Part shown: in pieces, positions 13,234-62,556 of the stretch
Layout of the letters: the number at the start of each line of letters is the position of its first letter
How positions within the stretch are numbered: the stretch's first letter is position 1
Source: Sphyrna mokarran
Taxonomy: Eukaryota
Reading direction: 5' to 3'
DNA length: 64,000 bases
Assembly (NCBI GenBank): GCA_024679065.1
Contig: JAGIQG010000001.1
Coordinates: 144,460,001 to 144,524,000 of the forward strand
Notes under the pieces: generated by a model
The model's database searches: none
What the model was told of the DNA's origin: nothing
Seen by the model: the letters and a program-made list of their open reading frames with translations, nothing else
Translations under genes and position numbers: made by a program

Positions 13234-13599
13234 ATATTTTGGAGTTATTATTTAACATGTATATGAATTTTATTGTATAATACACTACACGATAGGTTTA
13301 ACTTACACAGGGGTTACAGAGTGTCACAAAATGACACAACCATGTCTAACCTCTCCAAGAGACCTCTCAACAAACAGAATCTCCAGAACGTGTGCTGATT
13401 GTCATCAAGGGCAGATGATTTGACATCTGAAAATAATGGATTAGTTTCCTAAGTGTTGTGAATAAGGCCAGAGGATTCAGGAAGTGGAGACTTGTAGCTT
13501 GCACATTGCTCCATAATCTGTGACTAATTACCCAGTCAATTTGACACAGCTTCCCTTTCTCAAAATTTGTTGCTTGAGGCTCAGCAGCTTCTGGAAGCA

Positions 13600-19395: not shown

Positions 19396-19799
19396 AAATA
19401 TGGAAATCAAACTCAGGTGATATCACAAGTGTAAGCTTTTAAGAATGTTTAGAGAGATAGGGCATTGCAAGGGTTAAATGACCCCAAGTATTTTTCTAGA
19501 GGTTTAGCTGTTAACAAGTAGACCACCTTGGACCTTCTGCTGATTGCAGTCCTAAGTTGCATCATGAGTGATCACACAATTGCAAAGAAAACACGTGCTC
19601 TTGCTTAAAATCTGAAGAAAAAGAAAATTGGTGACCCATTCTTAGGAGTAATGTTTGCTAAGGAACATTAATTGGGGCAATGCATGATTGCACTGCACCC
19701 AATGGATCTCATGCAGGCAGCAAACAAACTTCATGTTGTCTGTGATCTTTATGACAGTAGCTTGGAATTCAGCGCAAAACATATTGCTGAATGACCACA

Positions 19800-21512: not shown

Positions 21513-22164
21513 GGGCAGGTAGATTCATGCAAGGTAACATTAATTAAAGCTAGCCTGTTCCTCCGAAGCAAGAGAGAAGTTTTGGCTGTAACAGACGCTC
21601 AATGTGGCTGGGCAAGACATTCTCAAGAAGAAGAAACAAGAGTTCTGGACCATCAGGCTGGAGAGGGAACTCCTCAGTCAGGATGTACAGAACTGAGTCT
21701 GTTACTGAGGTTAGAAAGATAAAGAGAGTTTATCTCTCCACAGGGAATCAACCCTGAGGTGACCCTTCAGAAATAAACTGTGAAGGGAGGGGAAGTGGAT
21801 AGCCACGGAGATCAATGTCAACTGTGGTGCTACAAGGGCCTGGTGAACCTTGGCCAAGCTGTCAGGTCTATGCACATATCTTCAAATGCCAATACCTTCC
21901 AAATGCACCACCATCCTCACACCCTGATAAATGTACCACACCTCCATCACTCATTCATCAGCAATCCCTGGCCTTCCCTCCTTCTGTGCCATATAACCCC
22001 CTGTGCCTCCTCTACCACCCCCTACACCCGCCTTCACCCTTTTATACTGACCTGGTCCTGGACTCCAGGACTGCTGGTGATCTAAGTCCTGCCCATTGCT
22101 GCTCTGCTGGGACAGCCCAGCTGTTGGCAGCTATCTGAGTTGGGGCTTTGTAGAGTATTAAAAA

Positions 22165-35550: not shown

Positions 35551-38500
35551 CCACTATCTGATCATGCTATAATTCTCTGAGTGTATTGCTAAGACTTCCT
35601 TAGCAATAGGTGCTGCATTTTCCCAAAACTGATGCCAGGTTAACTGTCCTGTAGTTCCCTGTTTCTTTTGCCCTTCTTTCTCAAATGGCAGTGTTACATT
35701 TGCCTACCTCCAATTTGGGAATCTGAGAAATTTGGTAAATCGTAACTAGTGCATTTCTGCACTATTTCTTTTCCAATATTGAGCCTTTAAAATCTCAAGT
35801 CCTCAGCTCTTTGGGAGATGTAGCAATTTTTTTGAAGCTATATTTGCTAATTTTCTAAATTGAAATGTACAAGTTCTGCATCAACCCTATCCTAACTCAC
35901 AATTCCACTTCTCACCTCTATCTCTAATATCGTTAGGATAAGTAGGATCAGAGAAAGCCATTCGACACTTTGAGCCTGCTTCCACCATTCACATTGATCA
36001 TGATTGATCATCCAACTGACCCTATCTCTACTCTTTGATTCCCGTTGCCCTAAGTGCTATGTCTAACTGTATACAGTATGTTCTCAAGCAATAAATAAAC
36101 AATTTCCTTCTGACAAAGGGTCATCTAGACCCCTCCTCTCCCTGCAGATGCTGTCAGACCTGCTGAGATTTTCCAGTATTTTCTGTTTCTGAAACAATTT
36201 CTTTTCACTGATTTACCCCAAGCTTATTTTTAATAAATTTGTAGCTATCAAGATTTTTTGCTCATTGTAATGGTTCAGGAAAAAACTTAGAGGATATATT
36301 AAAGACAAGTATCCAGAAAAGATTGGACTAATAAGAGGGATTTAATAAAGGAATTTAACAACTGGAAAACCTATTGAACTTATCTGGGAGATAACTGACT
36401 GAATAACCATATTGCCTGCAGGTTACTCTGGATGTTAGGGGAGTTTCATCAAGAGAAGCCTTACTCTGGTGTTTCCATCTATTTATACTAGCTCCTGCCC
36501 TCACAGTGGGCTTGTCAATGGAATGATTGCATAAGTCAAGCAACTGACAGGCAATTCAATGCAATGAGCAGTTTTTAAAACAGTGACTTTCTCACTGTTT
36601 GTGCAGCGGAACTGACTTATCCAAAGAATTATCCACATAGGAGCTGCTACATTTCCAATCAATCTGCATAACTGAAGTCCTCCTCCCTATGAATGATTTC
36701 TACCTCCTCTCTACTGTTTTCACATGCCTAAGTTAAATGTTAACAATTAACAAAAGCCACCATAAGTATTTTTTTGTAACTATCATACCTGCAGAAGGAG
36801 TTTGAGACATGGATGCAAATCAGAAGATAATGGCAGATTTGAACCAAACTGCGAAGGCACACATTCTTTCAGAACAGATCATTGTTTACACCTCCAGTGA
36901 ACTGAACAAAGAACATTACAGCACAGGAACAGGCCCTTTGGTCCTCCAAGCCTGCACTGACCATGCTGCCCAACTGAACTAAAATCCCCTACCTTTCTGG
37001 GCACCATATCCCTCTATTCCCATCCTATTCATGTACTTGTCAAGATGCCTCTTAAAAGTCACTATCATATCCACTTCCACTACCTCCCCCGGCAACGAGT
37101 TCCAGATGTAAAGGATCTGCTTCGAACATCTCTCTCTGTGTAAAGAACCTGCTTCATATATCTACTTTGATAGATGAATGCCGTGCAGACTTAGTGACAC
37201 CCAGTTCAATTGGAGGCTGGACGCATAACGTGAAAGGACTGCACTTGACAGTTGAAGGTTCAAAACCATATTCTGTAACCGCCAAAATGGAAAGTAGTCA
37301 TCTCATTGAATCTTCCTTCCCCTGCCCGAAATTAGTATTGAACAGGCCACAGAATCTTCCAGATGAGTGTGAAGAAGGGAATGAAAGAAACAACTTGGAG
37401 CTCCAGCTCTCTCTGCTTTTTGCACCTCCTTCAACAGCATCTCCAGAGAACAACTTCAACTGGGAGCCAAACACAACAGCATCTCCAGCTCCTTGTACCT
37501 CATGGCGAGCAGCATTAGACTGACCAGATCCACCCCGTGAGATGATCTGAAGTCCAGAACCAGCCCTAAATGAGAAGGAAAGCCCAAATCAATGACTGCA
37601 GATCCTGAAATATCAGCCAACGCTCAAAGACTGGGAAATGTTGCAGCATTATTAAACAGGTATTACCAGTCTTTTTGGACAAACAGTTCAAATATAGTGA
37701 TAGAGGCCTGTAAATAAAGTGTACCTAGTGTCGATTTGAGACTATTTATTTAGATATTTAAGACTGTTCACTGAAGAGTCCTGTGAAAAAAATGATAGAG
37801 TTTAATTAAAGTACAATAGTTGATTCTGATAACTATTGTTTTTCTTTGATAAAGTGTCCAATAAAGTTGTGTTGGACTTTCACTTATCTCACCATGTAAT
37901 GCGCCCAAATTAAAAAGGATTACTGCGTACAGGTCAAGTTTAGTTAGTGTACATCTACCCACCTTTCAGTTTACAGCACTAGCCAGTGTCATCTGCATCA
38001 GGTAAAAGAATTAATAAAACACTGATCTGGCCTTTCTTAGACCTCAATATTGAACTCCTTTTGCCATATTTTTATGCACTTAATTTATCAATATCTGTTT
38101 GCAATTTTCTGCTTTTATATGAACTATTAACTATGCTGCATAATTTAGTGATCTTGGCAAACTTTGAGATACAAGTCTCTATTCTTTCAACTAAGTCTAT
38201 TACAAATGAATTAAAACTAAGATCCTGGGACAGATCTTTGGGGATAGCACTAGCCACATTCTGAAGAAAGCAAGAAAGACTTCTATTTATTTAGCATCTT
38301 TAATGAACTTTGAATAGTCCAAAGTACAATGCAGCCAATTAAGTACTTTTTGAAGTGTAGTCACTGTTATAAAGTAGGAAACACAATAGTCATTATGCAC
38401 ACAGTAAGGTCCCACAAATAGCATTGCGATAACGACCATATAATTGGTCTCTCGGTTGAGCAATAAATATTGGCCGGTGCAGAGGGAAACCCTACAGCTT

Positions 38501-39146: not shown

Positions 39147-39391
39147 TATAAAATAGACTTCTAAGGACGATTTCTGTTTTTCTTTAAAATGCCCAGAATC
39201 AAAGACAGGGTTACTAGCATCTTCTTTCTAAACTGCAGCAACTTCTTAAAATGGAACAGAAACTAACCTGGAGTTATTAAAAGAAACAAACCCATAAGAC
39301 AAGCAAAACAGTTTGCTGTTTCATTTTCTTTAGGCTACAGTTGTGGCCAAGTGAACAGCTGCCGCACGAAAGGAAGATCACTGAAGTAGAC
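39147..39391 (+). promoter_or_regulatory. Candidate J chain-like promoter/5' region
   Basis: TATAAAA at 39147-39153; E-box CAGCTG at 39356-39361; ETS-like AAAGGAAG at ~39369-39376. A good acceptor (ttttctttag| at 39333) would instead imply an upstream non-coding exon. Confidence 0.3.
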
Positions 39392-39458
39392 ATGGTGAAG
39401 ATTAAACATATGCTAGGGCCACTAGCAATAATTCTACTTTTTACAGCTCTTGCAGCAG
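39392..39458 (+). CDS. JCHAIN: J chain-like coding exon 1 (signal peptide)
   Basis: gacATGG Kozak context; MVKIKHMLGPLAIILLFTALAA; donor GCAG|gtaatg, phase 1. Confidence 0.85.
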
Positions 39459-42400
39459 GTAATGTTTTAATTATTATGTTTTGCATTTTGGCACATGATG
39501 AGTAAATATTTCCTATTTTGTTAGTCCAGAGATATAGGAAGACTAGTGTCTTCTCCATGATAACTAGATACGGTATTGGTGAACTGAAGTTAAGTGAGGA
39601 TAGTGGTACAGGCACTGAAAATCATTGCCATAGATTGAAATTTCAATGTTCATTTCTGATAGTTGTTAACTTATCCCTCAGTCCATCCTGCTCCAGGTCA
39701 AAACATTTTTAGTTTCTTGCAACGAGTTTTCTATAGGTTAAGCAGTGACCCATTGCAAAAAGGATCACTTGTTCAAGGACTGTTCTTTTAATGAGCTGAG
39801 CTGTTTTAATGATGTTGGTTGAGAGAGAAAAATGGTAATTTGGAACACTGAAAGAACTTCCGTGCACGCGTTTGATAATTTCATAAGAATCTTGATGTCT
39901 GTTCATGAGGGCAGATAATTCTTTGGCTCAATGTCATATTCTGCAGAAAGTGACAGTACCAGTCCCTTTCGACAATCTTATAAGTCACACCAAAAGGCAT
40001 ATTTTAAAAAATGATACTTGTACATGAGAAACAAAAGTTAGCATGTGGGTACAACAAGCAATTAGGAAAACAAATGGCATATTGGCCTTTATTGAAAGGT
40101 GATTGAAGTACAAGAATAATGAACTCTTGCTACAATTGTATAGGACTTTGAGGAGATCACCTGGGGTACTGTGCACATTTTTTGGCCTCCTTATCTCATG
40201 AAGGATATAATTGGAAGAAATATAATGAAGTTTCACTGGATTGACTCCTGGGATGACAGGTTTTCTAATGTTGAGAGACTGAGTAAATTGTGACTATTTT
40301 CTCTTGGGTTTAGAAGAATGAGAGGGGATCGTGTTGAAGTGTACAAGTTTCTGAGGAAGCTTGATTGAGAGGTTGTTTCCCTTGGCTGGGTAATATAGAA
40401 CAGGGCCATTATCTCAGGAAAATCATTGAGATTAAGATGAGGAGAAATGTTTTCACACAAATGTTTGTGAATCTTAGGAATTCTCTACTCCAAACGGCTC
40501 TAAATGCTTTATTATGCTTATATTCAAGGCTGGGATGAATAGATTTTTGAACTCTCGGGAATTCAACTGATACTGTGCTGAGTAAGGCAAAAGCTCAGTT
40601 TTATTATGTTAAGCAGCAGAGCAGTCTGAAGGGACCATATGGACTACTCAGCTCTTATTTTTATGGTTATATATTTTTATTAATGTACAGCATGATTGAA
40701 ATATATATTCTTTTAAAACAATCTGGACAAGTCCTAATATTAAGTAAACAGTGTCAGTTGGGAGCCAAGTGCTCATTCTGGACACAAATGCTCAATGAAA
40801 CAGTTTAGTCATAAAATGGAAAACTATTTACATGCCTACGCTATTCAAATTCAAGATCTATAACTTGGCACAATTAAAATTATTACAATAAAATGAAAGA
40901 TTAATACAAACATGGCTAACACAAGACAATTTTTAAAGAAATAAAGACTTTAAAAAAAATCAAACTTATCAAAAGTTAAGAAATTATAGCAAAATAATGA
41001 AAAAAGAGTTTCAAAAACAAAGGAATTGGAAAAACAAACCTTTTAGCAAAATGTATAAAACTAAAATATAAAATTGTCAAACCACGTACAAAACTATTTA
41101 AAAGAAAGCTAAATTCTGCTTCTCAACTTGAAAAACATGCAGTTCAATAAGTCCAAAAGCTAAGAAAGTAAGAAAGAGTAATGCTCTCGAAACATTAACA
41201 CTCTTTCTCTCTCCACAGATGTTGTCAGATCGGCTGAGTATTTCCAGCACTTTCAGTTTTTATTTCAGATTCCCAGCATCTGCTCAGTATTTTGCTTTAA
41301 TAAGAAAGTATGTGTTGTTTTATGAAAATAGATGCAAGTCATGTTGTTCTTTTTTGTTAAGGAAAGTTTTACGTTGTTTTTTAATTGCTGTGCTTGCCAG
41401 GGAATGGCTTCCCATTACCAAGTCCCTCGACCAGGCACTGAGCGCCTTTGAATAAGGGAACTCTCTTGGAGTTTGTAAGAAACTCAGTGCAGGATGGTTT
41501 TTCATGCTCTCCATATGGTAAACCGCCTCCCCATCCACCACAGTATTAATACCAGTGGTGGTGGGATGCAGCCTGTAAGCTGGCATGAATAGACTTAAAA
41601 CCTCTATTGACAACTAGCTCATCCATGGGACTTGCCATCATGGATTTAATCAGGATGGAAGTAGGAATGTACTGCAATCCCCATCTACTATCCCTCTGCC
41701 TGATTACACAACCCACTCATCACCAAACCCAACACTGGGGCAGGCATTAAATGGTATCCTGTATCAAAGGTAAATTCTTGTATGGGAGGTTGCGCCATAT
41801 AATAGTGATAAAATAATTGACTGGCAGGATGTAAGAAATGGTGTTGCCCAGGGATCTGAGCTTTTTTCCATAGATAATCAATGACTTAGATGAAGAAATA
41901 GAAGTTATGAAACAGGTTTACAGATGACGCAAGGTTAGAAGACACCGTAAGTTAAGGAGATGGAAGCGGGAAGTCAGAATGAGACTTTGACAGAGTAATA
42001 CTGATGGGGCTCAATTTGGGGAAGTGTGGTAACACCAACTTTAGATCCAAGGAAAACAAATTACAGCATTTTCTGGATGACATTTGTATTTCTTCATTCC
42101 AGACAATAAATTTATTCTTTCTTCATTCTAAAGCCTCAGAATGCTTCCTATAATGTAGAGCCCGATAGCGCACAATAATCTGACTGAATTCTTATTCAGC
42201 TGTTCTGATTAATATCACTGCAGTTTCCACTGTTGTAAAGTATACAATAAATTGAATAATTAATCCATTAATTACAAGTTTATAATTTCACACTACAATC
42301 TAGAATCTCCCTTGGTATGTTACTTCTTTCCCAGGCATACAATAATGATGCTCTAGAACCACAGCAATGTCTATGAAGGCAAAGTTCCTGTTGGCAGATG

Positions 42401-45400
42401 TAGTCAAACCCTTGACATTCAGAAGTGGCTCTTACAGCCACTTAGAATATTGGTCAGCAGCTTTTTTTTAGTCTGTGACCTGTTGGTGTGACTCCCAGTC
42501 CATCAATGTACTCCTGTTAAATAGCACTGGTCCTTTGCCATTCACTTTGACAATAAGAGATTCATTGTGTGCATTTGATAAGCAAGATCTCAACATTCAT
42601 ATCAGACCATTACTCATTCCACTGACTGAAATTTCATCAGGGCTTCAATACAGGAAGTATTAGTTCCTCTTTTTAATGATACTGCATCAGATTTAGAGAG
42701 CTGGTAACTATGTCTATCTTTACAGTTGACACCAACAGCCACCTTCTAGTTTCGTCACAATGTAAGCTGTTAGAAGTGAAATCCAGAATGGTTGTAACTG
42801 AAAACCCGAACGGTGCAAAAGTGGAACATGTTGCAAGAGATATAAAAATTATGTAAGTTGATTTCTGATCGTATTCACTGTATAGTAAAATTAAATGGAG
42901 AGGCAGATTACTAGAAGCTGATTAGAGACAGTTTTGCACCATGAACACAAGAAAATATGTGGAAAAGGCATATAATAGAGTGGAGACCATCATTTCATCA
43001 TTCAGACTGAAAGCAAGGTATAACATAGTTCTCCCGTCAGAAACATAGGGATTTGGACACAACCATCCCACTACCACTGTCCAACACAACAATTTCATTC
43101 CCATGATGAGTGTGGAGACTGGAGAATCTGTCAAATACACTCCTCCATTTCTACACATAAAACTATCAGAATTCTGAGGAATTCTATTAACAGTTTAAAA
43201 GGTTTCAGTGGCAGGCAAAGTAATGCGCACAATTTCGATGCTAATTATTCTTGTAGAATTTCTCCTAAAGAAATGACAAACTGTTGCTGCAATGAACCAA
43301 AAAGCCAGCGACACGGATTCGATTCCAGCCTTGGGTGACTGACTTGTCTGTGTGGGGTTTGTCTGCATGGGTTTCCTTGGGGTGCTCTGGTTCCTTCCCA
43401 CAATCCAAAAATGTGAAGTTTAGGTGGATTGGTCATGCTACATCTCCTCTGAGTGTCCAAAGATGTGTAGGTTAGTTGGATTAGCCATGGTAAATGGGCA
43501 GGATTATGGGATAGGGCAAGGATAGGCCTGGGTAAGATGCTTTTTTGGAGCGTTCATGCAGATTCGATGGGCTGAATGGCCTGTTTCTGCACTGTAGGAG
43601 GTTATATGATCCTCTGAAGAAAACTGGAAAATAGTAGCACCACCAACTAGATTATGCAGTTGATTGAACAATGGGTGAACCTGTCCAGGTCGTTGGGCAT
43701 GGAGCTACATGAGCCATTAATGGGAAATGTAGAGACTGAAAGGAAAATCAGATCATGGAAAACAAGCTCATACCAACTGATCACAAGATAAGGAAGATCT
43801 TTTATCACATCTCAGTTTTATCCATTTCAAAAAGGCATTGGAGAAGATACAGAGGAGGTTTACCAGGATGTTGCCTGGTATGGAGGGCAGGTCTTATGAA
43901 GAGAGGCTGAGGGATTTGAGGTTGTTTTCGTTAGAAAGAAGGAGGCTAAGAGGAGACCTTATTGAAACATATAAGATGATTAGAGGTTTAGATAGGGTGG
44001 ACAGTGATAGCCTTTTTCTAGGATGGAGAAAGCTAGCACGAGGGGACATAGCTTTAAATTAAGGGGTGGTGGTTTTAGGACAGATGTCAGAGGTAGGTTC
44101 TTTACCCAGAGGGTGGTAAGGGTATGGAATGCCTTGCCTGCGTCAGTTGTAGATGCGCCAAGTTTGGTGGCGTTTAAGAGGTTAGTAGATAAGTTTATGG
44201 ATGAAAGGGGAATGGTTTAGGTTAGAGGGTCACTGCTTGTTCCTAATTGGTCGGCGCAACATCGAAGGCCGAAGGGCCTATTCTGCGCTGTAATGTTCTA
44301 TGTTCTATGTTCTACCCCACTGTGGCACAGAATCATTTCTTAATTGATTCACGAGTTCTTTCCCCCAAGTATTCTATTCATAGCACAGCTTTACAATATT
44401 TCGTCCAATAAGGCACTGAATTACTCAATCAGTTTCAATTTCACAATGAGTTCTTCAGTTGATGTGGAACTACCTTTTTCGATCACGTCAGCAAGAAACA
44501 CTCTAGTGGTTGTAGGTTCAGTTTGAGTCAGGATACACACATTGCTTTAGATGTGAAGTTTAAAGTTACTTAAAAGGAGCAATATAACCTACCTTTTATT
44601 CTATGGATTACCCAGCTTGCCCTTAGCTTTGGCATTGCTACTCAGCTTTATCATAAAGAACTTTAAATGCTTGATTTTATTTAACAGCATCATAAAATTC
44701 CATCCACAATGATCTAGAAGCATATATTGAGGGTCTCTAATAATCTCGGGATGACTATTAATTGCTCTTTCATTGCAGAGTTCCCCTGAGAACCAGAGAG
44801 AACATTTTAGATCCAACCTCCCCAATTCGGACCCACTTTGTCTACAAGATTTCAGATTTGTATGATCATTATTATTTTTATGAATTTTATAATGTATAGT
44901 TGTAAAATCTGAATTGGAATGATGATTGCAATGTATTATGTGTGTGGTGTATAAACGAGTCACATCTTTGATGTGGCATTTTATCCTCTGGAAACATAAT
45001 CACAATGCACCCAGTGGTTCCCCTTTATCCACAGCACCGGAAAGATTCACCGGTGGGAGGTGGCACTTTGTTTGCTAGCAATGGGATTCTCTGGTCCCAC
45101 CACTGTCAATGGGAATTCCCATTTACATCACCCCATGCTGACGGGAAACCCACAGGTGGAAATGCGCTATTGGTGGAACAGGAGAATCCCACCGACATGA
45201 ATGACCAGAGAATTCAGCCCACATATTACTTCGTCAAAGAGTTCCAATAAGTTGGTTAAGAATGATTTTCCTTTCACAAAACCATGTTGGCTCCACCTGA
45301 GTGGCTTGAATTTTTCCAAGTGTCCTGCTATAACATCTTTAATAACGGCATCTAATGTTTTCCCTATGACAGATATTAGATTGTAATTTCCTGTTTTCTG

Positions 45401-47967
45401 TCTCTGAATAATGGAATTACATTGCCATCTTCCAATCTAATGGCACCTTCCCAATCTAATGGGATCTTCCCAAATCTCCAACAATTTACTCAGTACCACT
45501 TCTCTGCCAACTGTAATTTTCTTAAGTTCCTCCCTCACTTTCATTTCCTTGTTTATAGCTGCTTTTGAGGTGTTACATGTAGCATACATTTGAGGACAAT
45601 GAATGTGGGCTCAAGATTCTGCCCATAGGCCATCAGAACTGTGTCACAGTTGAGTCCAAAAGTATGGAACTGACCTCCAGCTGCTGTACAAAGCTCTGGT
45701 GTCTCATCTACCTCTATCTATGCTGTTCTTGAATCCTTTCCCTGCCCATCGGACAGATGAAATGCCTGTTTATGTTTGGTTCTGCTGTTAATTACTGCTG
45801 GAACAGATTTCTAACCTGTCATCAGAAGCTACAGCTTGCACGTCTGTGGTAAGCAATGCTGACCAGGAGACACTCCCCCTCTTATTGTCTGCTTTAGTAA
45901 CTTGGAAAGTTTGCAGGTTGGTAATCAATCTGATTGCCTCAACATGAATGTACCCTCTATGGCTATCGAGACGCAGGGGAGGATTTGAACCCAGAGCTTC
46001 TGTCTTAGATGCTGGGATACTATCCACTGCACTACATGACATTCTTCTGCCTCTGTAGCATGCTTTAACTTATGCACATAGTAGAATGTGAGCTGGTAGC
46101 TGCAAGTATGCAGTTGAGTGACATTTATATTGTTGATAAGTATCTCTTTGCTTTTCGTATCAGCTACTCTCCCTTTCTCTTTTTCCCTCTTTCTATTTAT
46201 TCTGTCCGATAGCTCATAGTCCTTTCTCTGTTATTCCATTTGTCATTTTCAGCTGTGTCACATTTCCCTCTGTAATCTCTTCCAATGCAGTAACAATCCC
46301 AATCCCATTACAATTCCTTTTATCCCTGGCTATCTCAGCTAATCATTGATCAACTGAAGGGTAGCAATGAAAGTCCTGCTGCAGTAAACAGAGATTTGGC
46401 TGAGCGCCAAATTCTCTGTCATTGCTTGTAGTGGTCTTGCGGTATGAATGGCTGGAGAATTCTGGTTACTAGGCGGAATTTTCCAACAAATTGTCGGAGC
46501 ATCAAGCTTTTTCTGAAACCAGGCATGCTTCTCTCCAGAAACGCAGCTGAGTATTCATGCTAGACATCCCAGCACTCTGTGCACAGAAAATCTGGGGGAG
46601 TGTTTACACTGTCGCTCTGGTGGGATAGAGGGGCTGATAGATCCAAGGATTTGGAGCGTCAACTATAAAGGACATTTAAAATAATCCCACCTCCCACCCC
46701 ACCCACCCTCCATCTCCATCCCTGACCTGGACAAAGAGCACCAACCCACAAGCTTTGGGGCGACTTCCTTCCAACTAAAGTATCTGGGGGCACTCTTCTC
46801 ATCCCCCCTCCCCTGCACCGTCATTGGGGATCTCCTCTCCCCCCACTACATATAAAAAGTAACCCCTCCTCTAAAAGAGGAAAGTTAGCACCCCCCAACA
46901 TTGCCCATATGGCACTGCCAGGTGCTAGGGGGCAATGCCCTGACTTGACACTCAACTCTTGGGATTTCCAGGCACGTATGAACCCCTGGCATGATCATCA
47001 CAACTCATTTACACTTTTGAAAATCAGTAGTAATTTGCACTGGCGTGTCGTCATACTGCTGGGAAAGGAAAGAGGTTCCAGTATGGGCAGAAGCTACAAC
47101 ATAAAGCTGTTTAAGTTTATTTAAATTTATTCAAACTAATGAAAATGAGATTCATGCCAATGGGGAGGGAGTGGGGGGAGGGCTGGAGAGAGAAAAGGTG
47201 GGGGAAGATCACAAATTGAGACATCACTGGCACAAATCCTGTTTCGACCCTCTCACAAGATTATAATGTACCCATGGTGAGCAGAGCCACTAGACCTCAC
47301 CCAGTAACTTCATCATTCAGAATTTGACAGGGTCAAATGTAGAATTTTCAGCCAGGCTTTACCCAGCAATGACCCTATATTGGTTTTTAGTTGAAGAACT
47401 GCACTTCTTGAGAAAATATTGGTAGATTCTCTGGAACCACTTTCCTACCAGCAATGTGATTGACTATCATTAGAACATTAATATTAATCCCCCACTTCCT
47501 TGTATAACTAGTTTGACTGTGTTGTATATTGCCCTATTGAATTCACTACAAATGGGAATTGGTCACACGTAAAAGGGTTTCTAGTCATTGTGAACATGCT
47601 AACTGAATTAGAAAATTAATTCTAAACAGATTTAACTGCATGTGATGTAAACTTGTTTTCTGAATATCTAATGACTGTAAGGAATCAGGGCTATGTACTT
47701 AATGACAATTATATCTTTTATAATGTATCTTTTTGCAGCTGTAAGGATTGCTCTCCAAAGACATCTCCACAAATACCTCAGTGCAACCCCAAACCTCCAC
47801 CTGTGAGTGAATGTTACGCCCACGACAACAAAACGTGCCTAGACTATCAAAACCATTCACGATCGCTTGTTCTTAAACATCTATACGATGGTCAAGGGGA
47901 TCTAAAACCTACACTGGCACCTATTAAAACAACAAGAGATTTGTCATCAATATCAGATGCTCCATAG
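39392..47967 (+). CDS. JCHAIN: Immunoglobulin J chain-like; join(39392..39458,42726..42852,44779..44859,47739..47967), 167 aa
   Basis: Spliced translation: MVKIKHMLGPLAIILLFTALAAVDTNSHLLVSSQCKLLEVKSRMVVTENPNGAKVEHVARDIKIIVPLRTRENILDPTSPIRTHFVYKISDFCKDCSPKTSPQIPQCNPKPPPVSECYAHDNKTCLDYQNHSRSLVLKHLYDGQGDLKPTLAPIKTTRDLSSISDAP*. IIVPLxxRENIxDPTSPxRTxFVYxxSDxCKxC matches human J chain (IIVPLNNRENISDPTSPLRTRFVYHLSDLCKKC), and ECYAHDNKTC matches ETCYTYDRNKC. All introns are GT-AG, phases 1,2,2, and exon 3 is 81 nt. Confidence 0.93.
39990..40660 (+). mobile_element. Old CR1 3' fragment in J chain intron 1
   Basis: Decayed KANGILAFI..GLKYK..LLQLYRTL and RRMRGD..EVYK motifs. Confidence 0.65.
42726..42852 (+). 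CDS. JCHAIN: J chain-like coding exon 2
   Basis: Acceptor tctatctttacag|; (V)DTNSHLLVSSQCKLLEVKSRMVVTENPNGAKVEHVARDIKI; donor AT|gtaagt. Confidence 0.92.
43290..43612 (+). mobile_element. HE1/V-SINE-like SINE in J chain intron 2
   Basis: ggattcgattccagccttggg, conserved core, CR1-like tail gatgggctgaatggcctgtttctgcactgtag. Confidence 0.75.
43833..44314 (+). mobile_element. Young CR1 3' fragment in J chain intron 2
   Basis: ORFs 43838..44062 and 44023..44220 are nearly identical in protein to the 19800-20300 copy; (ttctatg)n tail. Confidence 0.9.
44779..44859 (+). CDS. JCHAIN: J chain-like coding exon 3
   Basis: Acceptor ctctttcattgcag|; (I)VPLRTRENILDPTSPIRTHFVYKISD; donor TT|gtatga. Confidence 0.95.
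47739..47967 (+). CDS. JCHAIN: J chain-like coding exon 4
   Basis: Acceptor tatctttttgcag|; (F)CKDC...QC...ECYAHDNKTC...DAP*; corresponds to ORF-track entry 47653..47967. Confidence 0.92.
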
Positions 47968-48063
47968 ATTATTCTAAAGATCATATAAATAATTGCCCTG
48001 TTTCTTTAAGACTTTTAAGCTTCACTGTTAGCCATGCTGGTCTTCTACTTTCTTCGATCAGAG

Positions 48064-48096
48064 AATAAAATGCTTCAAATCTTGTTTCATAATAAA
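48064..48096 (+). promoter_or_regulatory. J chain-like polyadenylation signals
   Basis: AATAAA at 48064-48069 and 48091-48096, about 100-130 nt after the stop codon. Confidence 0.6.
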
Positions 48097-48169
48097 CTCT
48101 GATCTCCATATTATGCATCACTTATAAACGTGTCATGTTTCATGAGAATCAAAATTGAGACAATTAAGG

Positions 48170-49359: not shown

Positions 49360-52300
49360 GGGATGAGAATGCATGTGGGGTTCAGTGATGGGTATTGCTA
49401 TTGAAACTCAAGGGGCAATGGTTAGATGAGATGATGGAGATGATCATTTTCTGGCACTTGTGTGGCATGAATGTTCCTTGCCACTTGTCAGCCAAGCACG
49501 AGTATTGTAAAGGTCTTTTTGCATTTGGACATGGACTGATTCAATATGAGGAGTCACAAATAGGTGCTGAACATTGTACAGTAATCTGCAAACATCCCCA
49601 TTCTGCCATTATGATGGAAAGCAGGTCATTAATAAAGCAGCTGAAGATGGTTGGACTGCGAACACCCCTCTGAGGAACTGCTGCAGTGATACTCTGAAGC
49701 TGAGATGATTGATCTCCAATCAACACACTGTCTTCTCTTGTGCCAGTATAATTTCAACTGGTGGAAGGACTTCCCCTGATTCCCATTGATTGTAGTTTCC
49801 CTTAGGGTTCCTTGATGTCATATTTTCTCAAATGTTAATCTTAAGCCAAAGAACAAAGAACAAAACAGCACAGGAAAAGGCTCTTCAGCCCAACGAGCCC
49901 ATGTCGCCACCTCAATGTTCCCACTTCCACCCATGATCCCTGCCTATGTTTATAGAAATCTGTATTGGAACCAAATTTGCAAGACAATTTAGGGAGAATT
50001 TGTTTTGCCAATTAGCCTAAGAGCACATCCTTGGGGTGTGGAAGGAAATTGGAGCACCCGGAGAAAATCCATGGAAGCAAGGGGAGAATGCGCAAACTCC
50101 CACAGACACAGGCCCAAATCCATGTATCTGCACAGCACAGCGATAGTCACTGAGCTGTTGTGTTGCCCATCAAATGGTCCAGGTCAAGCGTATACTAACG
50201 ACGTGAAGCACTAGGATACTCTCAACAAAAATCCAAGAGCAGCCCTCTCACGATCCATCGCGTGTATGCCCCTTGTTAGATAACAAGGTGGATTGAAGTA
50301 CCTGTAAGATAAAACAGAAATACATCATTATCATTCGCAATTCACGTATTCCCAGGGAACTCCCACGGCTCATGACCCCTACTTTAAATCAGTCTTCTAT
50401 ACCCCTCCATCCCCATTCTGTTCATGTGCCCATCTAAGTATCTCTTAAATAACTTCAGCATGCCTGCCTCTACCACCTTACTTGGCAGTGCATTCCATAC
50501 CCCCACAACCCTCTGTGTGAAAAATCTCCCTCTAGCATCCAAATTATACCTTACCCCCTCACCCTAAGCCCGTGATCCCTCGTGATATTTGATTGCAACC
50601 TAGGAAAAAGCTTAACCCTGTTTACTCTATCTATACCACTCATAATTTTGTACAGCTCTATTAGATCTCCTCTAAGTCTACGTCTTTCTAAAGAAAACAC
50701 CCCAATTTGCCTAACCTCTCCTCGTAACTCAGACCTTCCATACCAGGCAGCATCCTGGTAAACCTCCTCTGCACTCTCTCCAGAGTTTCCACGTCCTTCC
50801 GGTAGTAAGGCGACCAGAACTGGACGCAGTATTCCAAATGAGGTCTAATCAACTTTTTATACAATTGCAACATTAAAGGCCAGCTCTTGTACTCTATACC
50901 CCTTCCTATGAAGGCTAGCATACCATATGCTTTTTTCACAACCTTCTCCACCTGCTCTGCCACCTTCAGAGACTTGTTCTCCTGCACCCCCAGGTCCCTC
51001 TGCGTTTCTATACTCTTAATAGGTCTACCATTTACCATATACCTCCCCACTACATTATTTCTCCCAAAATGCATCACCTCACATTTATCAGGATTGAATT
51101 CCATCTGCCATCTATCTGCCCAAGCTACCAGCCTATGTCCTGCTGTATCGCCTGACAATGCTCCTCACTATCCGCAAGTTCAGCCGTCTTTGTATCATCT
51201 GCAAACTTGCTGATTACACCACTTACTCCCTCTTCCAAGTCATTTATATATATTACAAATAGAAGAGGTCCCAATACTGAGCCCTGCAGCACACCACTAG
51301 TGACTGACCTCCAGCTAGAAAAACACCCTTCCACTATTACTCTCTGTCTCCTATTACCAAGCCAGATACTTATCCATCTAGATACCTGTCCTTGTTTTCC
51401 ATTAGCTTTGACCTTTTCAACTAACTTCTCACGAGGGACTTTGTCAAACGCCTTACTGAAATCCATATAGACGACATCAACGGCTCGCCCTTCGTCGACC
51501 ATTTTTGTCACCTCCTCAAAAAAATTGTATCAGATTCGTAAGGCACGACCTCCCCTTAACAAAGCCATACTGCGTATCCCTAATCAGATTGCAACGCTCT
51601 AAGTGCATATACATCCTATCTCTAAAAACCTCCTCCAACAGCTTCCCTACCACTGACGTCAAACTCACCAGCCTATAATTTCCTGGGTTATCCCTACTAC
51701 ACTTTTTAAACAAAGTTACAACATTAGCTATTCTCCAGTCCTCTGGGACCTCACCTGTGTCCAAAGAAGAGACAAAGATTTGCGTCAGAGGCCCAGCAAT
51801 TTCACCTTGCACCTCCCTAAGCAGCCTGGGATAAATGCCATCAGGCCCAAGAGATTTATCTGTTTTAATGCTACCTAGAAGCTCTAAGACTTCCTCCCTC
51901 GTTATAGATTTTTCCTTCAACTGGTCTACAGCTCCCTCAGAGGTAGGACCAGTCAACAAGTCCCTCTCCTTCATGATTACTGATGCAAAGTATTCATTCA
52001 GGATCTCCGCCATTCCCTTGGGCTCTAAGCACAGTTCCCCTCCTCTGTCCCTGAGAGGTCCGATTTTTCCTCTAACCACCCTTTTATTCCTAACATAGGA
52101 ATAAAAAGCCTTTGGATTTTCCTTAACCCTATCTGCCAAAATCATTTCATGCCCCCTTTTTGCCCTTCTAACTCCCTGTTAGACTCTCTATACTCTAAAT
52201 GTTCCCTGTCCCTTCTATATAGTTGCCCTTCTTTCACAAAAACTTCCCAATTATCTACAAAAATAAAACCCTCTGCCCTACACCAGTCCTTCAGCCACGC

Positions 52301-53350
52301 ATTCAGCTGTAGGATCTCATTTCTCCTGGCCCCGCTGTTGCCTAGCCCTGGTAGCAGCCCTGAGATTGCCACCCTGGAGGCCCTGCTCTTCAGCCTGTCC
52401 CCCAACTCCCTAAACTGCCTTCGTATATCCTCCCTGCTCTTCCTTCCTACGTCCTTCTCTCCTATGTGAATAATCACATAGGCTGTCACTCTCACCTCAT
52501 CTTTGGAATTCAGCTCTTTTGTTCATGTTTACACCAAGGATGCAGTGAAGTCAGGAGCTGAGTGACCCTGGTTGAACCCAAACTGAACATCCATGAGCAG
52601 GTTATTACTGAATGAGTGCTGCATGAGAGCACTGTTGATAACACCTTCCATCATTTTACCGAAGATCAAGAGTAAACTGATGGGGCAGTAATTAACAACT
52701 TGTTCTGTTTCTTATGTACAGAACATCTTTGCAATTTTCTGTATTGTCAGATAGATACCAGTGTTGTAGCTGTATTGGAACAGCTTGGTTAGGGAAGCAG
52801 CAAGTTTTGGAGCATGTGGCTTCAGTACTATTGCTAGAATGTTGTCAGGGCATACAGCTTTTGCAGTATCCAGTTTCTTACATCTTGTGGAGTGAAATGA
52901 ATTGGCTGAAGACTGGCATCTGTGATGCTAGGACCTCAGGAGATGGATCATCAATTCGTCACTTCTGGCTGAAGATTTTTGTGAATGCGTCAGCTTTGTC
53001 TTTTGCACAGATATGCTAGGTTCTTCCATCATTGAGGATAGTGGCACAGGCAGGAATGGTGATGGTGATGTGGGACTTTGTCTGTAAGGTATTATTCTGT
53101 GAGTATGACTATATCAAGCTGTTGCTTGGCTGTTCTAAGACACCTCTCCCAATTTTTGCAGTAAGTAAGGAGGCGTTAGTAAGGAGGACTTTGCAGGGTC
53201 AACAGTGCAGAGTTTGCCATAGTCACCCCTAAATCGATGCCAAATGGTCCATCCAGTTTCATTCCTTTTTGTTCCATTTATAATTGTTGGACATAACTGA
53301 ATAACTTGGTAGGTCATTTGAGAGTCAAGCACATTATTGTGGGTCTGGCG
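49360..53350 (-). mobile_element. Old LINE (RT remnant) split by a younger CR1 insertion at ~49848-52490
   Basis: VPQRGVRSPTIFSCFINDL in ORF 49541..49726; the two flanks join colinearly when compared with 7680-7800. Confidence 0.7.
49848..52490 (-). mobile_element. CR1 LINE copy, 5'-truncated and internally deleted (ORF1 remnant fused to mid-ORF2), SINE-containing 3'UTR
   Basis: ORF 52142..52495 is an ORF1 esterase part; ORFs 51516..52145, 51125..51511 and 50688..51158 are RT parts; 3'UTR homologous to 57476-57960. Confidence 0.9.
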
Positions 53351-57966: not shown

Positions 57967-60831
57967 TCATGTGGCTGTCCAAGAGACCTTAAACAGCCCC
58001 AGCGTGCCTGCTCCCACCACCTTACTCGGCAGTGCATTCCACACCCCCACTACCCTTTGTGTGAAAAACTGCCCTCTAATATTCGTCCTATACATAGCCC
58101 CCCTCACCCTAGGGCCATGACCTCTCGTCCTATCCATTTCTAAAGGTGGAAAAAGTTTACCTCCATTTACTCTATCTATACCCCTTATAATCTTATACAC
58201 CTCTATGAGATCCCCTCTAAGCCGACGTCTTTCAAGGGAAACAACCCCAGTCTATCTAATCGTTCCTCATAGGACAGTCCTTCCATACCAGGCAGCATCC
58301 TGGTAAACCTCCTCTGCACTCTTTCCAAGGACTCCACATCCTTCCGATAGTACGGAGACCAGAACTGGGCGCAGTATTCCAAGTGAGGCCTAACCAAAGT
58401 TGTATACAACTGCAACATCAAACTCCTACTCTTATATTCTATACCCTTTTCTATGAAATCTAACATACTATACGCCTTCTTTGTCACCTTCTCCACCTGT
58501 GAGGACACCTTCAGAGACTTGTGAACCTGCACCCCCAAGTCTCTCTGCGTCTCTATGCTCCGTATAGTTTTACCTTTTATCCTATAATTCTCTCTACATT
58601 TTTCTGGCCAAAATGCATCACCTCGCATTTTTCCAGATTAAATTCCATTTGCCATCTATCTGCCCAATCTACCAACCTGTCTATGTCCTGTTGTATTGCC
58701 TGACACTGCTCTTCTGTACCCGCCAATCCAAGCATCTTGGTGTCATCAGCAAATTTGCTGATCTCACCACCTACCCCTACTTCAAAGTCGTTTATGTAGA
58801 CCACAAATAGAAGAGGACCTAGTACTGAGCCTTGTGGCACTCCACTAGTGACAGGCTTCCAGCTGGAAAAAGAGCCTTCCACTACTACCCTCTGTCTCCT
58901 CCTTCCGAGCCAGTTTTCGACCCATATACATACACGACCCTGTATCCCATGCGCCTTCACCTTCTCTATCAGTCTACCATGAGGAACCTTGTCAAACGCC
59001 TTACTGAAATCCATGTAGACGACATCAACAGCCTGTCCTTCATCAACTGTTTTTGTCACTTCTTCAAAAAATTCCACTAGATTCGTAAGACAAGACTTCC
59101 CCTTGACGAAGCCATGCTGAGTATCCCTGATCAGATCGCAGCGCTCCAGATGCTCATACATCCTGTCCCTAAGGATCCTCTCCATTAGCTTACCTATAAC
59201 TGAAGTCAAGCTCACCGGCCTATAGTTCCCTGGGTGATCCATCTGACCTTTTTTAAACAACGGTACTACGTTTGCTATCCTCCAGTCCTCTGGGACCTCA
59301 CCTGTGTCCAAGGAAGAGACAAAGATTTGCGTCAGAGGCCCAGCCAAGTCTTCCTCAACTCCCTTAGCAGCCTGGGGTAAATGCCATCAGGCCCCGGAGC
59401 TTTATATGTCTTTAAGCTGCCTAACAGCCCCAACACCTCTTTCCTCGTAATCCTTATTTCCCCCAACCAATCTTCAACTTTGTCAACATCAGGCACAGAC
59501 ATCTGTCCAGTCTCCTGCGTGAATACCGACGCAAAGTATTCATTCAGGATCTCCCCCATTCCCTCAGGCTCTAAGCATAGATCCCCTCCACTGTCCCTAA
59601 GAGGTCCAATCTTGCCTCTAAACATCCTTTTGCTCCTTACATAGGTGTAAAATGCCTTTGGATTTTCTTTAATCCTACCTGCCAGAGCCACCTCATGGCC
59701 CCTTTTTGCCTTTCTAATACCCCTTTTTAGATCCCGTCTACACTCTCTATAAGCTTCCAGTGCTATCTCAGTCCCTAGTTGCCTAAATCTAATGTAAGCC
59801 TCTCTCTTTTTCTTGATCAAGTCCTCAATCTCCCTGGTAAGCCAAGGTTCTCTAATCCTACCTTTCCCATCCTTCCTCCTTGGCGGCACATATCTTTCCT
59901 GCAGAGAGTTTAGTTTTCCCTTGAAAGACTCCCACATGTACCTCGTCGACCTGCCCTCAAAAAGCTTATCCCAATCCGTATCTTTAAGTTCTTGCCTAAT
60001 CTGGCCGTATCTAGCCCTCCCCCAGTTAAATACCCTCCCTTTTGGGCCAGTCTCATCCTTTTCCAGTAATATCCTAAAGCAGACAGAGTTGTGATCACTA
60101 TTTGACACCTGCTCTCCTACCTCGACGTCAACCACCTGGCCTGGCTCATTCCCCAGAACCAAATCCAGTATAGCCCCCCCTCTAGTCGGGCCATCCACAT
60201 ACTGCTCCAAGGACCCTTCCAAAACACACTGTACAAATTCCTCCCCATCCACTCCTACAGCCCTGGGCACACTCCAATCTACTCCAGGAAAATTAAAATC
60301 TCCCACCACTACCACCCTATTTTTCCTACACTTATCTAAAATGTCCCTGCATATCCCTTCTTCCACAGCCCGCGGGCTGTTGGGCGGTCTGTAGTAAACA
60401 CTCAACAGAGTAACCACTCCCTTCCTATTCCTCAACTCCACCCATAGAGACTCAGTTCCTAAATCATACATACCTATCTCCCTCTGCACTGCTATGACGT
60501 TGTCCTTAACTAATAAAGCCACTCCCCCACCTCTCTTCACACCAACTCTGTCACACCTAAAACACTTATACCCTGGAATATTCAATTGCCAGTCTTGCCC
60601 CTCCTTCAACCACGTCTCGGTCACCACCACCACGTCTAAACTCCTCGTGAACATTATTGCCTTCAGTTCATCTGTTTTGCCAGTCACACTCCTCGCATTA
60701 AAACACATGCACTGAAGACCCTCAGCTCTCGGAAATACCTTTCTACCTACCGGTGTTGCCCTATCATCCCTCTCTATCCCACTCCCAGTTCCTGCTGTCT
60801 CCCCACCCTCCCTCCCTATTAGTTTAAACAT
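57967..60831 (-). pseudogene. CR1 ORF2 (APE endonuclease + reverse transcriptase), frameshifted as assembled
   Basis: Segments 59332..60831 (NARS, VTETWL, YYRPP, GDFN, LDLVL, SDHN), 58577..59347 (YMDFSKAFD, PQGSVLGP, FADD), 58203..58628 and 57967..58200; three apparent 1-nt frameshifts. Confidence 0.9.
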
Positions 60832-61709
60832 TTTTGAAACACTCCAGCTAACCTCCCAGCTAAAATATTTGTTCCCCTCCCAGTCAACTGCTCCCTATCC
60901 CTCATAAATAGGTGACCCTCCCTCCTGAAGACTTCCCAATGATCAATAAATATGAAGCCTTCTGCCCTACACCAATCCCTCATCCATGCATTTAGTTGAA
61001 GTGTCTCATTTATTACCCAATCGGTCCCAGGCACAGGCAGCAGCCCAGAGAACGCCACCCTGGAGGCCCTACCTTTCAGTTGAGCCCCCAACTCCCTAAA
61101 CTGTCTACGCAAGTCCCCCCTGCGCTTTCTTCCTACATCTTTTTGTCCTATGTGAACTATTACATTTGCCTTAGACCCTCTTCCCTTCAACATTCCCTCT
61201 ACCCTCTCTGATACATCCTGGACCCCTGCTCCAGGGAGGCAGACTACCATCCTGGAGTCTCTCTTTTGCCCACAGAATCTCCTATCGATCCCTTTAACCA
61301 TCCCATCCCCCACCAATATCTCACTTCCTACATTCCTGCTGGTCTCTGTGGCCTTCTGTTCCCTCTCCATCACAGCTTTTACCCCCCCCTTGGTTTTCTG
61401 GGGATCCTCCTTAGAGATGGCCTTTGTGCCTTGATTTTTGTTCTTATTCCTTGTAACTGTACCCAGCCCATCCCTACTGCTAGATCCTGGGGTCCCTGCA
61501 GGTCTGCCCTCCCTATTCATTGTGTCCTCATTTTCCCTCACCAGACAAACGTCCTCCAAGCGCAGCTCCAGCTGTCTCAACTTTGCTCGTAAACGCTGCC
61601 GTTCTAAACATTTTGCGCATATGTGGGGCTTCGGGAGACGTGATGCCTCCAAGAAGGTCCACATATGGCAGCGTACACAGTGGACGCGTTTGGCCAAGTA
61701 TCGTGGCAT
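60819..61709 (-). CDS. CR1 ORF1p (N-terminal Cys zinc-finger-like motif, coiled coil, SGNH esterase-like domain), 296 aa
   Basis: CVRC..CAKC, LRAKLRQLELRLE, ILVGDGMVKGIDRRFC, VVCLPGA, VIVHIG, FIFIDHW..F; intact ORF overlapping the ORF2 start by 13 nt. Confidence 0.88.
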   Translation of the reverse strand: MPRYLAKRVHCVRCHMWTFLEASRLPKPHICAKCLERQRLRAKLRQLELRLEDVCLVRENEDTMNREGRPAGTPGSSSRDGLGTVTRNKNKNQGTKAISKEDPQKTKGGVKAVMEREQKATETSRNVGSEILVGDGMVKGIDRRFCGQKRDSRMVVCLPGAGVQDVSERVEGMLKGRGSKANVIVHIGQKDVGRKRRGDLRRQFRELGAQLKGRASRVAFSGLLPVPGTDWVINETLQLNAWMRDWCRAEGFIFIDHWEVFRREGHLFMRDREQLTGRGTNILAGRLAGVFQKCLN

Positions 61710-62556
61710 TTTATATACCCCTTTAAAGGTGATTAGGTAAGAAGCACGTTACTCACTGCTTCCAAGCCTGCGCTCTTCCAAGCCCAGTGAGCTTAATCCC
61801 TTGTTCCTCTCACTCTAACTCCCGTCTCACTCCACTGCCCGCTCCCGACGCTGCCCGCTGTCTTACCTTGGCCTTCCTTTTATACTCCCGCGCTTCCTCC
61901 CCTGCAGCCCCCCGCGCCTACCTCCCGCTACGGAGCGCCGAAATAAACACTCTGCAAAATAAAGTACAAGACAGAAATTGCAACTCAGGATTCTCTCCAG
62001 CCACTCTCCAAATAACTCTGCTCCGGAGAACAGTAAACTCCTCTTCTTTCTCAGGAGACTAAGTAAATTTGGCATGTCCACTACAAACCTCACCAACTTT
62101 TCCAGATGCACCACAGAAAGCATTCTTTCTCGTTGTATCACAGCTTGGTATGTTTCCTGCTCTGCCCAAGACCACAAGAAACTACAAAGGATCATGAACA
62201 AAGCCGAAAGCATCAAGCAAACCAGCCTCCCATGCATTGACTCTATACTTCCCACTGCTCTGCAAAGCAACCAGCATAATTAAGGACCCTGTGCACCCCA
62301 GACATACTCTTCCACTTTCATCCATTGGGGAATGATACAAAAGTCTGAAGCCACACATCAATCAACTCAAAAACTGTTTCTTCTCTGCTAACATCAGACT
62401 TTTGAATGGATCTATCTTGCACTAAGGTGATCTTTTTCTATTCCTAGCAATAACTGTAACACTACATTTTGCACCGCCTCCTTTCCTTCTCTATGTATAG
62501 CATGCTTTGTCTGTATAACATGCACGAAACAATACTCTTCTCTGTATACCAATACA

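What the first reader, a model, noticed from the sequence alone, without database searches (positions are those of the whole stretch)
39392..47967. Atypical immunoglobulin J chain: CKL instead of CKC, no terminal Cys, novel tail
Seen in sequence: an intact 4-exon J-chain-like ORF with only 6 Cys in the mature protein. Exon 2 reads S-Q-C-K-L (TGT AAG CTG, 42761-42769) where human has N-K-C-K-C. The loop between the C71- and C91-equivalents is 10 aa versus 19. After the C108-equivalent there is a 42-aa Cys-free tail unrelated to the mammalian C-terminus. Established: in mammals Cys14 and Cys68 bond the IgM/IgA tailpieces, C108-C133 is intrachain, and the C-terminal region contacts pIgR. Nurse shark J chain is already reported to lack some cysteines, so part of this divergence is known for sharks. 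Inference: this protein retains only one canonical Ig-bonding Cys (C68) plus a newly unpaired C108-equivalent. That implies rewired disulfides, a different polymer geometry or partner (IgW, IgNAR or a non-Ig partner), or a second, neofunctionalised J-chain paralog.
Basis: partly seen in the sequence, partly recalled or inferred. Interest (0 to 1): 0.85.

Follow-up and report, generated by a model that had tools for sequence, protein, structure and literature searches.

The report
Ordinary shark J chain gene
This is the normal immunoglobulin J chain gene of a ground-shark relative, and its "missing" cysteines and odd tail are the pattern already published for the nurse shark and shared by every related shark examined here.

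Summary
A four-exon gene on the + strand (39392-47967) has intron phases 1-2-2. Its mature part has six Cys, reads C-K-L at 42761-42769, has a 10-residue loop and a 42-residue Cys-free tail. A spliced 615-nt contig from a second sample of the same organism confirms introns 2 and 3, the exon 1/2 junction and the CTG codon.

The interpretation as atypical or as a new paralogue is not supported. The nurse-shark J chain (AAO14897.1, P0112) has the same six Cys, CKL and an ...SDAP end. So do all 13 galeomorph shark records, from 10 species. All 13 squalomorph, ray and skate records keep C-x-C. The closest relative is the Mustelus asterias J chain (36/41, 23/26 and 63/75 identical residues for exons 2-4). 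A CXCL8-like gene lies upstream, which is the published chondrichthyan synteny. No second copy lies in the window.

One point remains open: both Cys appear to have been lost on the galeomorph stem, so the J-to-IgM disulfide wiring must differ from the mammalian one. My searches found no paper stating this lineage pattern.

The exons were never joined, and every search was run exon by exon. Interest is low.

The parts
39392..39458 (+). Exon 1: start codon and a 22-residue hydrophobic signal peptide, plus the first base of the split Val codon (phase 1)
   Evidence: Translation; donor GTAATG; 18/22 residues identical to the Mustelus J chain N-terminus. Only the last ~37 nt are seen in the RNA contig, as the loose end at 42723.
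42726..42852 (+). Exon 2: N-terminal strand region with C-K-L in place of C-x-C
   Evidence: Pfam Ig_J_chain E 0.058, below cut-off. 36/41 identical to Mustelus. RNA contig piece 42723-42852 has 0 other letters.
42761..42769 (+). TGT AAG CTG = Cys-Lys-Leu; a Leu stands where tetrapods, rays and squalomorph sharks have the second Cys of the C-x-C motif
   Evidence: Confirmed in DNA contig X1 and spliced contig X3. CKL is found in 13/13 galeomorph records.
44779..44859 (+). Exon 3: the most conserved J-chain block; here it reads N-I-L-D-P, so the usual N-I-S glycosylation sequon is absent
   Evidence: Pfam Ig_J_chain E 2.3e-9. PDB J chains E 1.8e-8. No sequon in exon 3. Joints 42852>44779 and 44859>47739.
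47739..47967 (+). Exon 4: the CxxC pair, a short loop, three further Cys, a decayed last hairpin without its closing Cys, an elasmobranch extension ending SDAP, and the TAG stop
   Evidence: E 3.8e-24 to the basking-shark J chain. 63/75 identical to Mustelus. RNA contig piece 47739-47999 has 0 other letters. Sequons NKT and NHS.
48064..48069 (+). AATAAA polyadenylation signal; a second one lies at 48091
   Evidence: The 615-nt contig runs about 109 nt past 47999 (record positions 506-615).

Best explanation
This is the orthologous JCHAIN gene of a carcharhiniform (galeomorph) shark. It encodes the small secreted joining chain that is built into polymeric (19S) IgM. Shown here: the gene structure, the splicing, expression in at least one library, the orthology, and a six-Cys pattern identical to the nurse-shark J chain. 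Inferred from work on other species: the protein docks by its conserved strands (exons 2-3) onto the IgM tailpieces and is fixed by disulfides. Galeomorph sharks lack the Cys that bonds one tailpiece in mammals (C14/C15) and also lack the closing Cys of the last hairpin (C133/C135). Two even-numbered rewirings are possible. In the first, the first Cys of the former C-x-C bonds the tailpiece, and its old partner ('ECY') pairs locally with the freed 'KTC' Cys, which lies 7 residues away. In the second, the 'KTC' Cys itself bonds the tailpiece. The decayed last hairpin fits a J chain that polymerises IgM but does not serve pIgR-type transport.
For: J-chain identity. Intron phases 1-2-2 with the signal peptide ending at exon 1/2 match the JCHAIN/CXCL gene plan in PMC10801876 (whole main text read). 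Synteny: a CXCL8-like gene lies upstream on the same strand; its exon 2 (9827-9985) matches Pfam IL8 at E 3.1e-5 and its exon 3 (11422-11535) at E 1.5e-3. That paper describes the same arrangement for chondrichthyans. Orthology: identity falls with taxonomic distance, from Mustelus through Scyliorhinus and lamniforms to orectolobiforms and then squalomorphs and rays. Only self-hits to the four exon peptides are significant in the 64 kb. Same pattern as the published protein: P0112, nurse shark. CKL with 6 Cys occurs in 13/13 galeomorph records. Expression and splicing. Net charge +3 over the three exon pieces fits the 'neutral or basic' cartilaginous-fish J chains of PMC10801876. Function without those two Cys is plausible. 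In mouse J chain, C15S still gave secreted pentamers, and deleting hairpin 3 with C110 and C135 did not change pentamer formation in vitro. One Cys of the CxC and one of the CxxC had to remain (PMC11729874, passages read). An AlphaFold2 model of the nearest relative (P0006) matches only J chains among solved structures: ranks 1-15, best E 3.2e-4.
Against: Exon 2 alone is below the Pfam cut-off, and exon 4 alone hits no Pfam family or solved J chain. No protein-level or tissue evidence exists for this species. Run X3 is only guessed to be RNA, though its contig is spliced, and its tissue is unknown. Copy number in the rest of the genome was not tested. PMC10801876 reports 'one or more jchain genes' in sharks and rays. 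The model has mean pLDDT 65.3 and TM-scores of only 0.25-0.42 to solved J chains. Which Cys bonds IgM is pure inference.
Confidence: 0.93

Rival explanations
1. It is a second, neofunctionalised J-chain paralogue that serves another partner (IgW, IgNAR or a non-Ig protein), while a canonical 8-Cys J chain lies elsewhere in the genome.
For: PMC10801876 states that some sharks and rays have more than one jchain gene. Skates show 2-3 distinct J-chain proteins per species. The rest of this genome was not searched.
Against: Every galeomorph species in the searches yielded only the CKL/6-Cys type, and none yielded an 8-Cys type. The nurse-shark protein of this type is the one GenBank names immunoglobulin-associated J chain. 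The synteny is the one described for chondrichthyan jchain. There is no second copy in the window.
Confidence: 0.03
2. It is a decaying or functionless gene, and the lost cysteines, lost glycosylation sequon and divergent tail reflect relaxed constraint.
For: Two of the eight ancestral Cys are absent, the N-I-S sequon reads N-I-L, and the middle of the tail varies in length among galeomorphs, from 33 to 46 residues after the last Cys.
Against: The frame is intact and all splice sites are canonical. A spliced contig reaches depth 2017 in a 98-million-letter run. The six Cys, the exon 3 block and the C-terminal K-P-T...T-x-D...S-x-SDAP end are kept across three shark orders and into rays.
Confidence: 0.02
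3. The Leu codon is an assembly or sequencing error and the real gene reads C-x-C.
For: None found.
Against: Contigs from two runs of different samples read CTG with 0 differences. Leu stands at this position in 13/13 galeomorph records.
Confidence: 0.01

Closest known systems
Nurse shark (Ginglymostoma cirratum) immunoglobulin-associated J chain, AAO14897.1 (P0112); Hohman et al. 2003, J Immunol 170:6016 (paper not held here)
   Same: Both read CKL in exon 2. Both have six Cys at the same aligned positions, no Cys after the 'xxC' that follows ECY, a 42-residue tail and an ...SDAP end. The length is 167 aa, equal to the sum of the window's exon pieces plus the three split codons.
   Different: It belongs to a different order (Orectolobiformes). 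Identity by exon is 27/41, 23/26 and 36/75. The nurse shark keeps the N-I-S sequon, whereas the window reads N-I-L.
Mustelus asterias immunoglobulin J chain-like, XP_078063998.1 (P0006)
   Same: It is the closest sequence found: 18/22, 36/41, 23/26 and 63/75 identical for exons 1-4. It has the same Cys pattern and tail.
   Different: It has a two-residue length difference in the tail and keeps N-I-S.
8-Cys J chains of squalomorph sharks and rays (Heptranchias, Pristis, Mobula, Hypanus, Narcine)
   Same: They share the gene family, the short loop after the CxxC and, except in Narcine, the extension ending SDAP.
   Different: They keep C-x-C and the closing Cys of the last hairpin ('NPEC'). The window and all galeomorphs lack both.
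Mammalian and avian J chain in solved IgM/IgA complexes (e.g. 6kxs_J, 7jg2_J, 9ec7_J)
   Same: The exon 3 block is nearly identical. A model of the nearest relative matches only these chains. The CxxC pair and three further Cys align.
   Different: Tetrapods have 8 Cys, a 19-residue loop (armadillo row), an acidic protein and a last hairpin that contacts pIgR. They have no SDAP extension.
CXCL8-type chemokines, proposed ancestors of J chain (PMC10801876)
   Same: Both have four exons with phases 1-2-2 and a signal peptide ending at exon 1/2. One such gene lies about 27 kb upstream in the window.
   Different: There is no detectable sequence similarity. The window's J chain no longer has the C-x-C that the paper lists as shared.

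Membership tests
JCHAIN (gnathostome immunoglobulin J chain, Pfam PF15097) | Sequence match to the Ig_J_chain profile | tested here: met
   Exon 3 scores E 2.3e-9 and 37.7 bits, above the 27-bit cut-off. Exon 2 scores 13.7 bits, below cut-off, and exon 4 has no match. The exons were searched apart and the joined protein was not scored. All 14 elasmobranch relatives carry PF15097.
JCHAIN (gnathostome immunoglobulin J chain, Pfam PF15097) | Four exons, intron phases 1-2-2, and the signal peptide ending at the exon 1/2 boundary (PMC10801876) | tested here: met
   Introns 2 and 3 and the exon 1/2 junction were seen in a spliced contig.
JCHAIN (gnathostome immunoglobulin J chain, Pfam PF15097) | Linkage to a CXCL cluster; in chondrichthyans, a position downstream of CXCL8-like genes (PMC10801876) | tested here: met
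   A CXCL8-like gene lies at about 9.44-12.3 kb on the + strand. Pfam IL8 matches at E 3.1e-5 and 1.5e-3 for two exons.
JCHAIN (gnathostome immunoglobulin J chain, Pfam PF15097) | Covalent incorporation into polymeric IgM/IgA and expression in plasma cells | not testable with these tools
   The only evidence is a spliced, deep contig in one run of unknown tissue.
Tetrapod-type 8-Cys J chain | C-x-C in exon 2 plus the closing Cys of the last hairpin, giving eight conserved Cys | tested here: not met
   The window reads CKL and has 6 Cys. This feature defines the 8-Cys type and not J chain as such, because the nurse-shark J chain lacks it too.
Tetrapod-type 8-Cys J chain | N-x-S glycosylation sequon in the conserved exon 3 block | tested here: not met
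   The window reads N-I-L. Scyliorhinus torazame also reads N-I-L. The other 11 galeomorph records keep a sequon there: N-I-S in ten and N-L-S in Rhincodon.
Galeomorph (nurse-shark-type) 6-Cys J chain | CKL, CxxC, three further Cys, no Cys in the tail, and a C-terminus of S-x-SDAP | tested here: met
   The window is shown. The same holds in 13/13 galeomorph records and 0/13 other elasmobranch records.

The most novel reading that the evidence does not exclude
The six-Cys J chain is a shared derived state of galeomorph sharks, not a general shark trait. The tailpiece-bonding Cys of the C-x-C and the closing Cys of the last hairpin were lost together on the galeomorph stem. Squalomorph sharks and rays keep the ancestral eight. 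These two Cys are not partners in mammals, so their joint loss implies a partner swap. The likeliest version has the first Cys of the old C-x-C bonding the IgM tailpiece and a new local 'ECY'-'KTC' disulfide. That would make galeomorph IgM a natural experiment on which J-chain cysteines are needed for pentamer assembly. A conserved, predicted-disordered extension ending SDAP, present from sharks to rays, would then mark an unknown elasmobranch-specific partner.
Probability: 0.5. Interest if true: 0.45.

Novelty: already known. Interest (0 to 1): 0.18.

Why it matters
For this locus it matters little. It is a correct reading of an ordinary, already described gene type, and it confirms the published JCHAIN-CXCL linkage in one more shark. 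The wider pattern is of modest interest. Recent mouse work treats the C-x-C couple as pivotal for starting covalent J-chain insertion (PMC11729874). PMC10801876 lists C-x-C as a feature shared by JCHAIN and CXCL genes. Yet a whole shark superorder that makes J-chain-containing pentameric IgM has had only C-x-L, probably since the stem of that clade. Disulfide mapping of shark 19S IgM would show directly which cysteines suffice.

Tried and rejected
Paralogue within the window: tblastn of the four exon peptides against the window at E up to 50 gave only self-hits as significant matches. The weak hit of exon 2 at 37951-38007 (E 0.32) was taken as chance.

Constraint was judged from protein alignments only.

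Exon 2 of a related species from reads: run X8 (organism C) holds a contig about 93% identical over 42001-43387. The table of differences was cut before exon 2, so its state is unknown. Run X2 gave only repeat pieces.

Representative search with exon 4: 4 hits at E <= 0.001, and only P0001 is a J chain. P0004 is a tandem-repeat protein. P0002 and P0003 have 15 and 5 matched stretches and were not examined. I took all three as low-complexity matches.

Holocephalan, coelacanth, Heterodontus and Squalus J chains were not found by either search, so the loss cannot be dated more finely.

Structure: coordinates are not returned, so Cys-Cys distances in the model could not be measured. The model is of the Mustelus protein, not of the window's own.

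Papers: Hohman 2003, Castro & Flajnik 2014, Castro 2013 and Flowers 2021 are not held. What I say of Hohman 2003 beyond the deposited sequence is recall. Searches found no paper that states the galeomorph versus squalomorph/ray split. Datasets S1 and S2 of PMC10801876 hold the authors' nine cartilaginous-fish sequences and may show it, but supplements were closed. Tacchi 2013 (PMC3743840, passages read) lists different Cys as missing in the nurse shark than alignment A2 shows. I followed A2.
Full report
What is there. Reading 39300-48100 and translating the pieces gives a four-exon gene on the + strand. Exon 1 is 39392-39458, exon 2 is 42726-42852, exon 3 is 44779-44859, and exon 4 is 47739-47967 with a TAG stop. 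All introns are GT..AG. The phases are 1-2-2 and the split codons read V, I and F. Exon 1 encodes a 22-residue hydrophobic leader. The rest holds six Cys. Positions 42761-42769 read TGT AAG CTG, that is C-K-L. Ten residues lie between the second Cys of the CxxC and the next Cys. Forty-two Cys-free residues follow the last Cys.

Is it a J chain, and is it real? Exon 3 matches Pfam Ig_J_chain at E 2.3e-9, above the curated cut-off, and matches J chains of solved IgM/IgA complexes at E 1.8e-8. Exon 2 is only a weak match (E 0.058). Exon 4 matches no Pfam family and no solved J chain. Against 1.84 billion representative proteins, however, exon 4 finds a basking-shark 'immunoglobulin J chain-like' protein at E 3.8e-24. 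Public runs were laid on 42000-47999. Run X3 comes from the same coded organism but from another sample and study. It holds one 615-nt contig at depth 2017. That contig skips exactly 42853-44778 and 44860-47738. It has no differences in exon 2 or exon 4, and it starts with the end of exon 1. So the gene is spliced as modelled and expressed, and the Leu codon is not an assembly error. The tissue of X3 is unknown and its RNA label is a guess, but a contig without introns can only come from cDNA.

What its relatives look like. The basking-shark protein found 14 elasmobranch J-chain clusters among 231 candidates. A profile of 15 of these proteins found 106 proteins among 2985 candidates: the same 14 clusters plus lungfish, amphibian, reptile, bird and mammal J chains. 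Cluster members include the nurse-shark protein AAO14897.1. I tabulated 26 elasmobranch records. All 13 galeomorph records read C-K-L, have six Cys, have no Cys in the tail and end in S-I/F-SDAP. They come from 10 species in Lamniformes, Carcharhiniformes and Orectolobiformes, orders confirmed as Galeoidea. All 13 other records read C-x-C. Heptranchias, Pristis, Mobula, Hypanus and Narcine have eight Cys. Pristiophorus has seven. Seven skate records are 122 residues long and stop after the sixth Cys. In alignment A2, the lungfish, caecilian, frog, turtle, swan and armadillo rows share C-K-C and the last Cys ('LNPEC', 'LTPxSC') with squalomorphs and rays, so eight Cys is the ancestral state. 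The short loop after the CxxC is common to all elasmobranchs. The first half of the galeomorph tail aligns with the last hairpin of the 8-Cys forms. The second half is an extension (K-P-T...T-x-D...S-x-SDAP) found in 18 of the 26 records.

Orthology. The window's exons are closest to Mustelus asterias (18/22, 36/41, 23/26 and 63/75). They are then closest to catsharks and lamniforms, then orectolobiforms, then squalomorphs and rays. That is the order expected for an orthologue in a carcharhiniform that is not Mustelus. The four exon peptides have no second significant match in the 64 kb. A CXC chemokine gene lies upstream on the same strand. Its leader is near 9440-9510. Exon 2 lies within 9827-9985 (Pfam IL8, E 3.1e-5) and exon 3 within 11422-11535 (E 1.5e-3).

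What is already known. Reviews state that the C-terminal region of the cartilaginous-fish J chain is poorly conserved and that transport of the mammalian kind is unlikely (PMC4279169, passages). PMC10801876 calls the elasmobranch C-terminus 'unique' and the protein neutral or basic. The window's pieces sum to a net charge of +3. Tacchi et al. 2013 (PMC3743840, passages) note that the 8-Cys pattern is not kept in the nurse shark, although their list of which Cys are missing differs from alignment A2. The nurse-shark and clearnose-skate sequences have been public since about 2003 (accessions cited in PMC3125105).

How it most likely works. By homology, the protein joins IgM subunits into pentamers. 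Mouse mutagenesis (PMC11729874, passages) shows that C15S J chain still yields secreted pentamers. It also shows that deleting hairpin 3 with C110 and C135 leaves pentamer formation in vitro unchanged. One Cys of the CxC and one of the CxxC must remain. The galeomorph protein satisfies these minimal needs. The two lost Cys are not partners in mammals, where one bonds the heavy chain and the other closes hairpin 3. Their joint absence therefore leaves two Cys that need new partners. I favour a swap in which the first Cys of the old C-x-C bonds the tailpiece and its former partner pairs with the 'KTC' Cys seven residues away. The alternative is that 'KTC' bonds the tailpiece. Neither could be tested here. 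An AlphaFold2 model of the Mustelus protein (mean pLDDT 65.3) has confident strands in the exon 2-3 region and a C-terminal 33 residues below pLDDT 50. Among solved structures it matches only J chains at ranks 1-15, with low TM-scores of 0.25-0.42.

Verdict. It is the ordinary galeomorph J chain, which is already known. The residual value lies in the lineage pattern: 13/13 against 0/13. My four literature searches did not find this pattern stated. The closed supplements of PMC10801876 and the unheld Hohman 2003 and Castro & Flajnik 2014 papers may contain it.

Noticed in passing
window 44779-44859 (codon TTA within 'gag aac att tta gat'): The otherwise near-invariant N-I-S glycosylation sequon of J chain reads N-I-L here and in Scyliorhinus torazame. 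Two other sequons (NKT, NHS) lie in exon 4.
   Followed up: partly
window ~9440-12300 (+): A CXCL8-like chemokine gene lies here. The leader is near 9440-9510, the C-Q-C exon is within 9827-9985, and the 'CLDP' exon is within 11422-11535. Pfam IL8 matches both exons. It lies upstream of JCHAIN, as published for chondrichthyans.
   Followed up: partly
window 43200-44400 (intron 2 of JCHAIN): Interspersed repeats reach summed contig depths of 10^5 to 7x10^6 in all four runs laid, including runs of other organisms. Smaller pile-ups lie at 45000-45400 and 46200-46600.
   Followed up: no
window 19750-21520 (-), 50690-52520 (-), 58200-61750 (-): Long open segments look like LINE reverse-transcriptase fragments; the motif resemblance is recalled and no Pfam scan was run.
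   Followed up: no
window 13517-14272: A long Pro/Ser/Leu-rich repetitive stretch is open in several frames on both strands.
   Followed up: no
P0013 (Pristiophorus japonicus J chain-like): The first Cys of the CxxC pair, which is the mammalian tailpiece-bonding C68/C69 equivalent, is Leu ('SDFLKNC') in this sawshark record. C-K-C and the last Cys are kept. This could be a real variant or a model or assembly error.
   Followed up: no
P0017, P0018, P0116-P0120 (skates): All seven skate J-chain records are 122 residues and stop just after the sixth Cys, so they lack the last hairpin pair and the SDAP tail. Amblyraja radiata has three distinct proteins and Rhinoraja longicauda has two, so the gene is multi-copy in skates.
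   Followed up: no
P0019 (Protopterus dolloi) in alignment A2: The lungfish lacks the two Cys that form the loop disulfide in mammals, as Tacchi 2013 reported. This is a clean paired loss, in contrast to the unpaired double loss in galeomorphs.
   Followed up: partly
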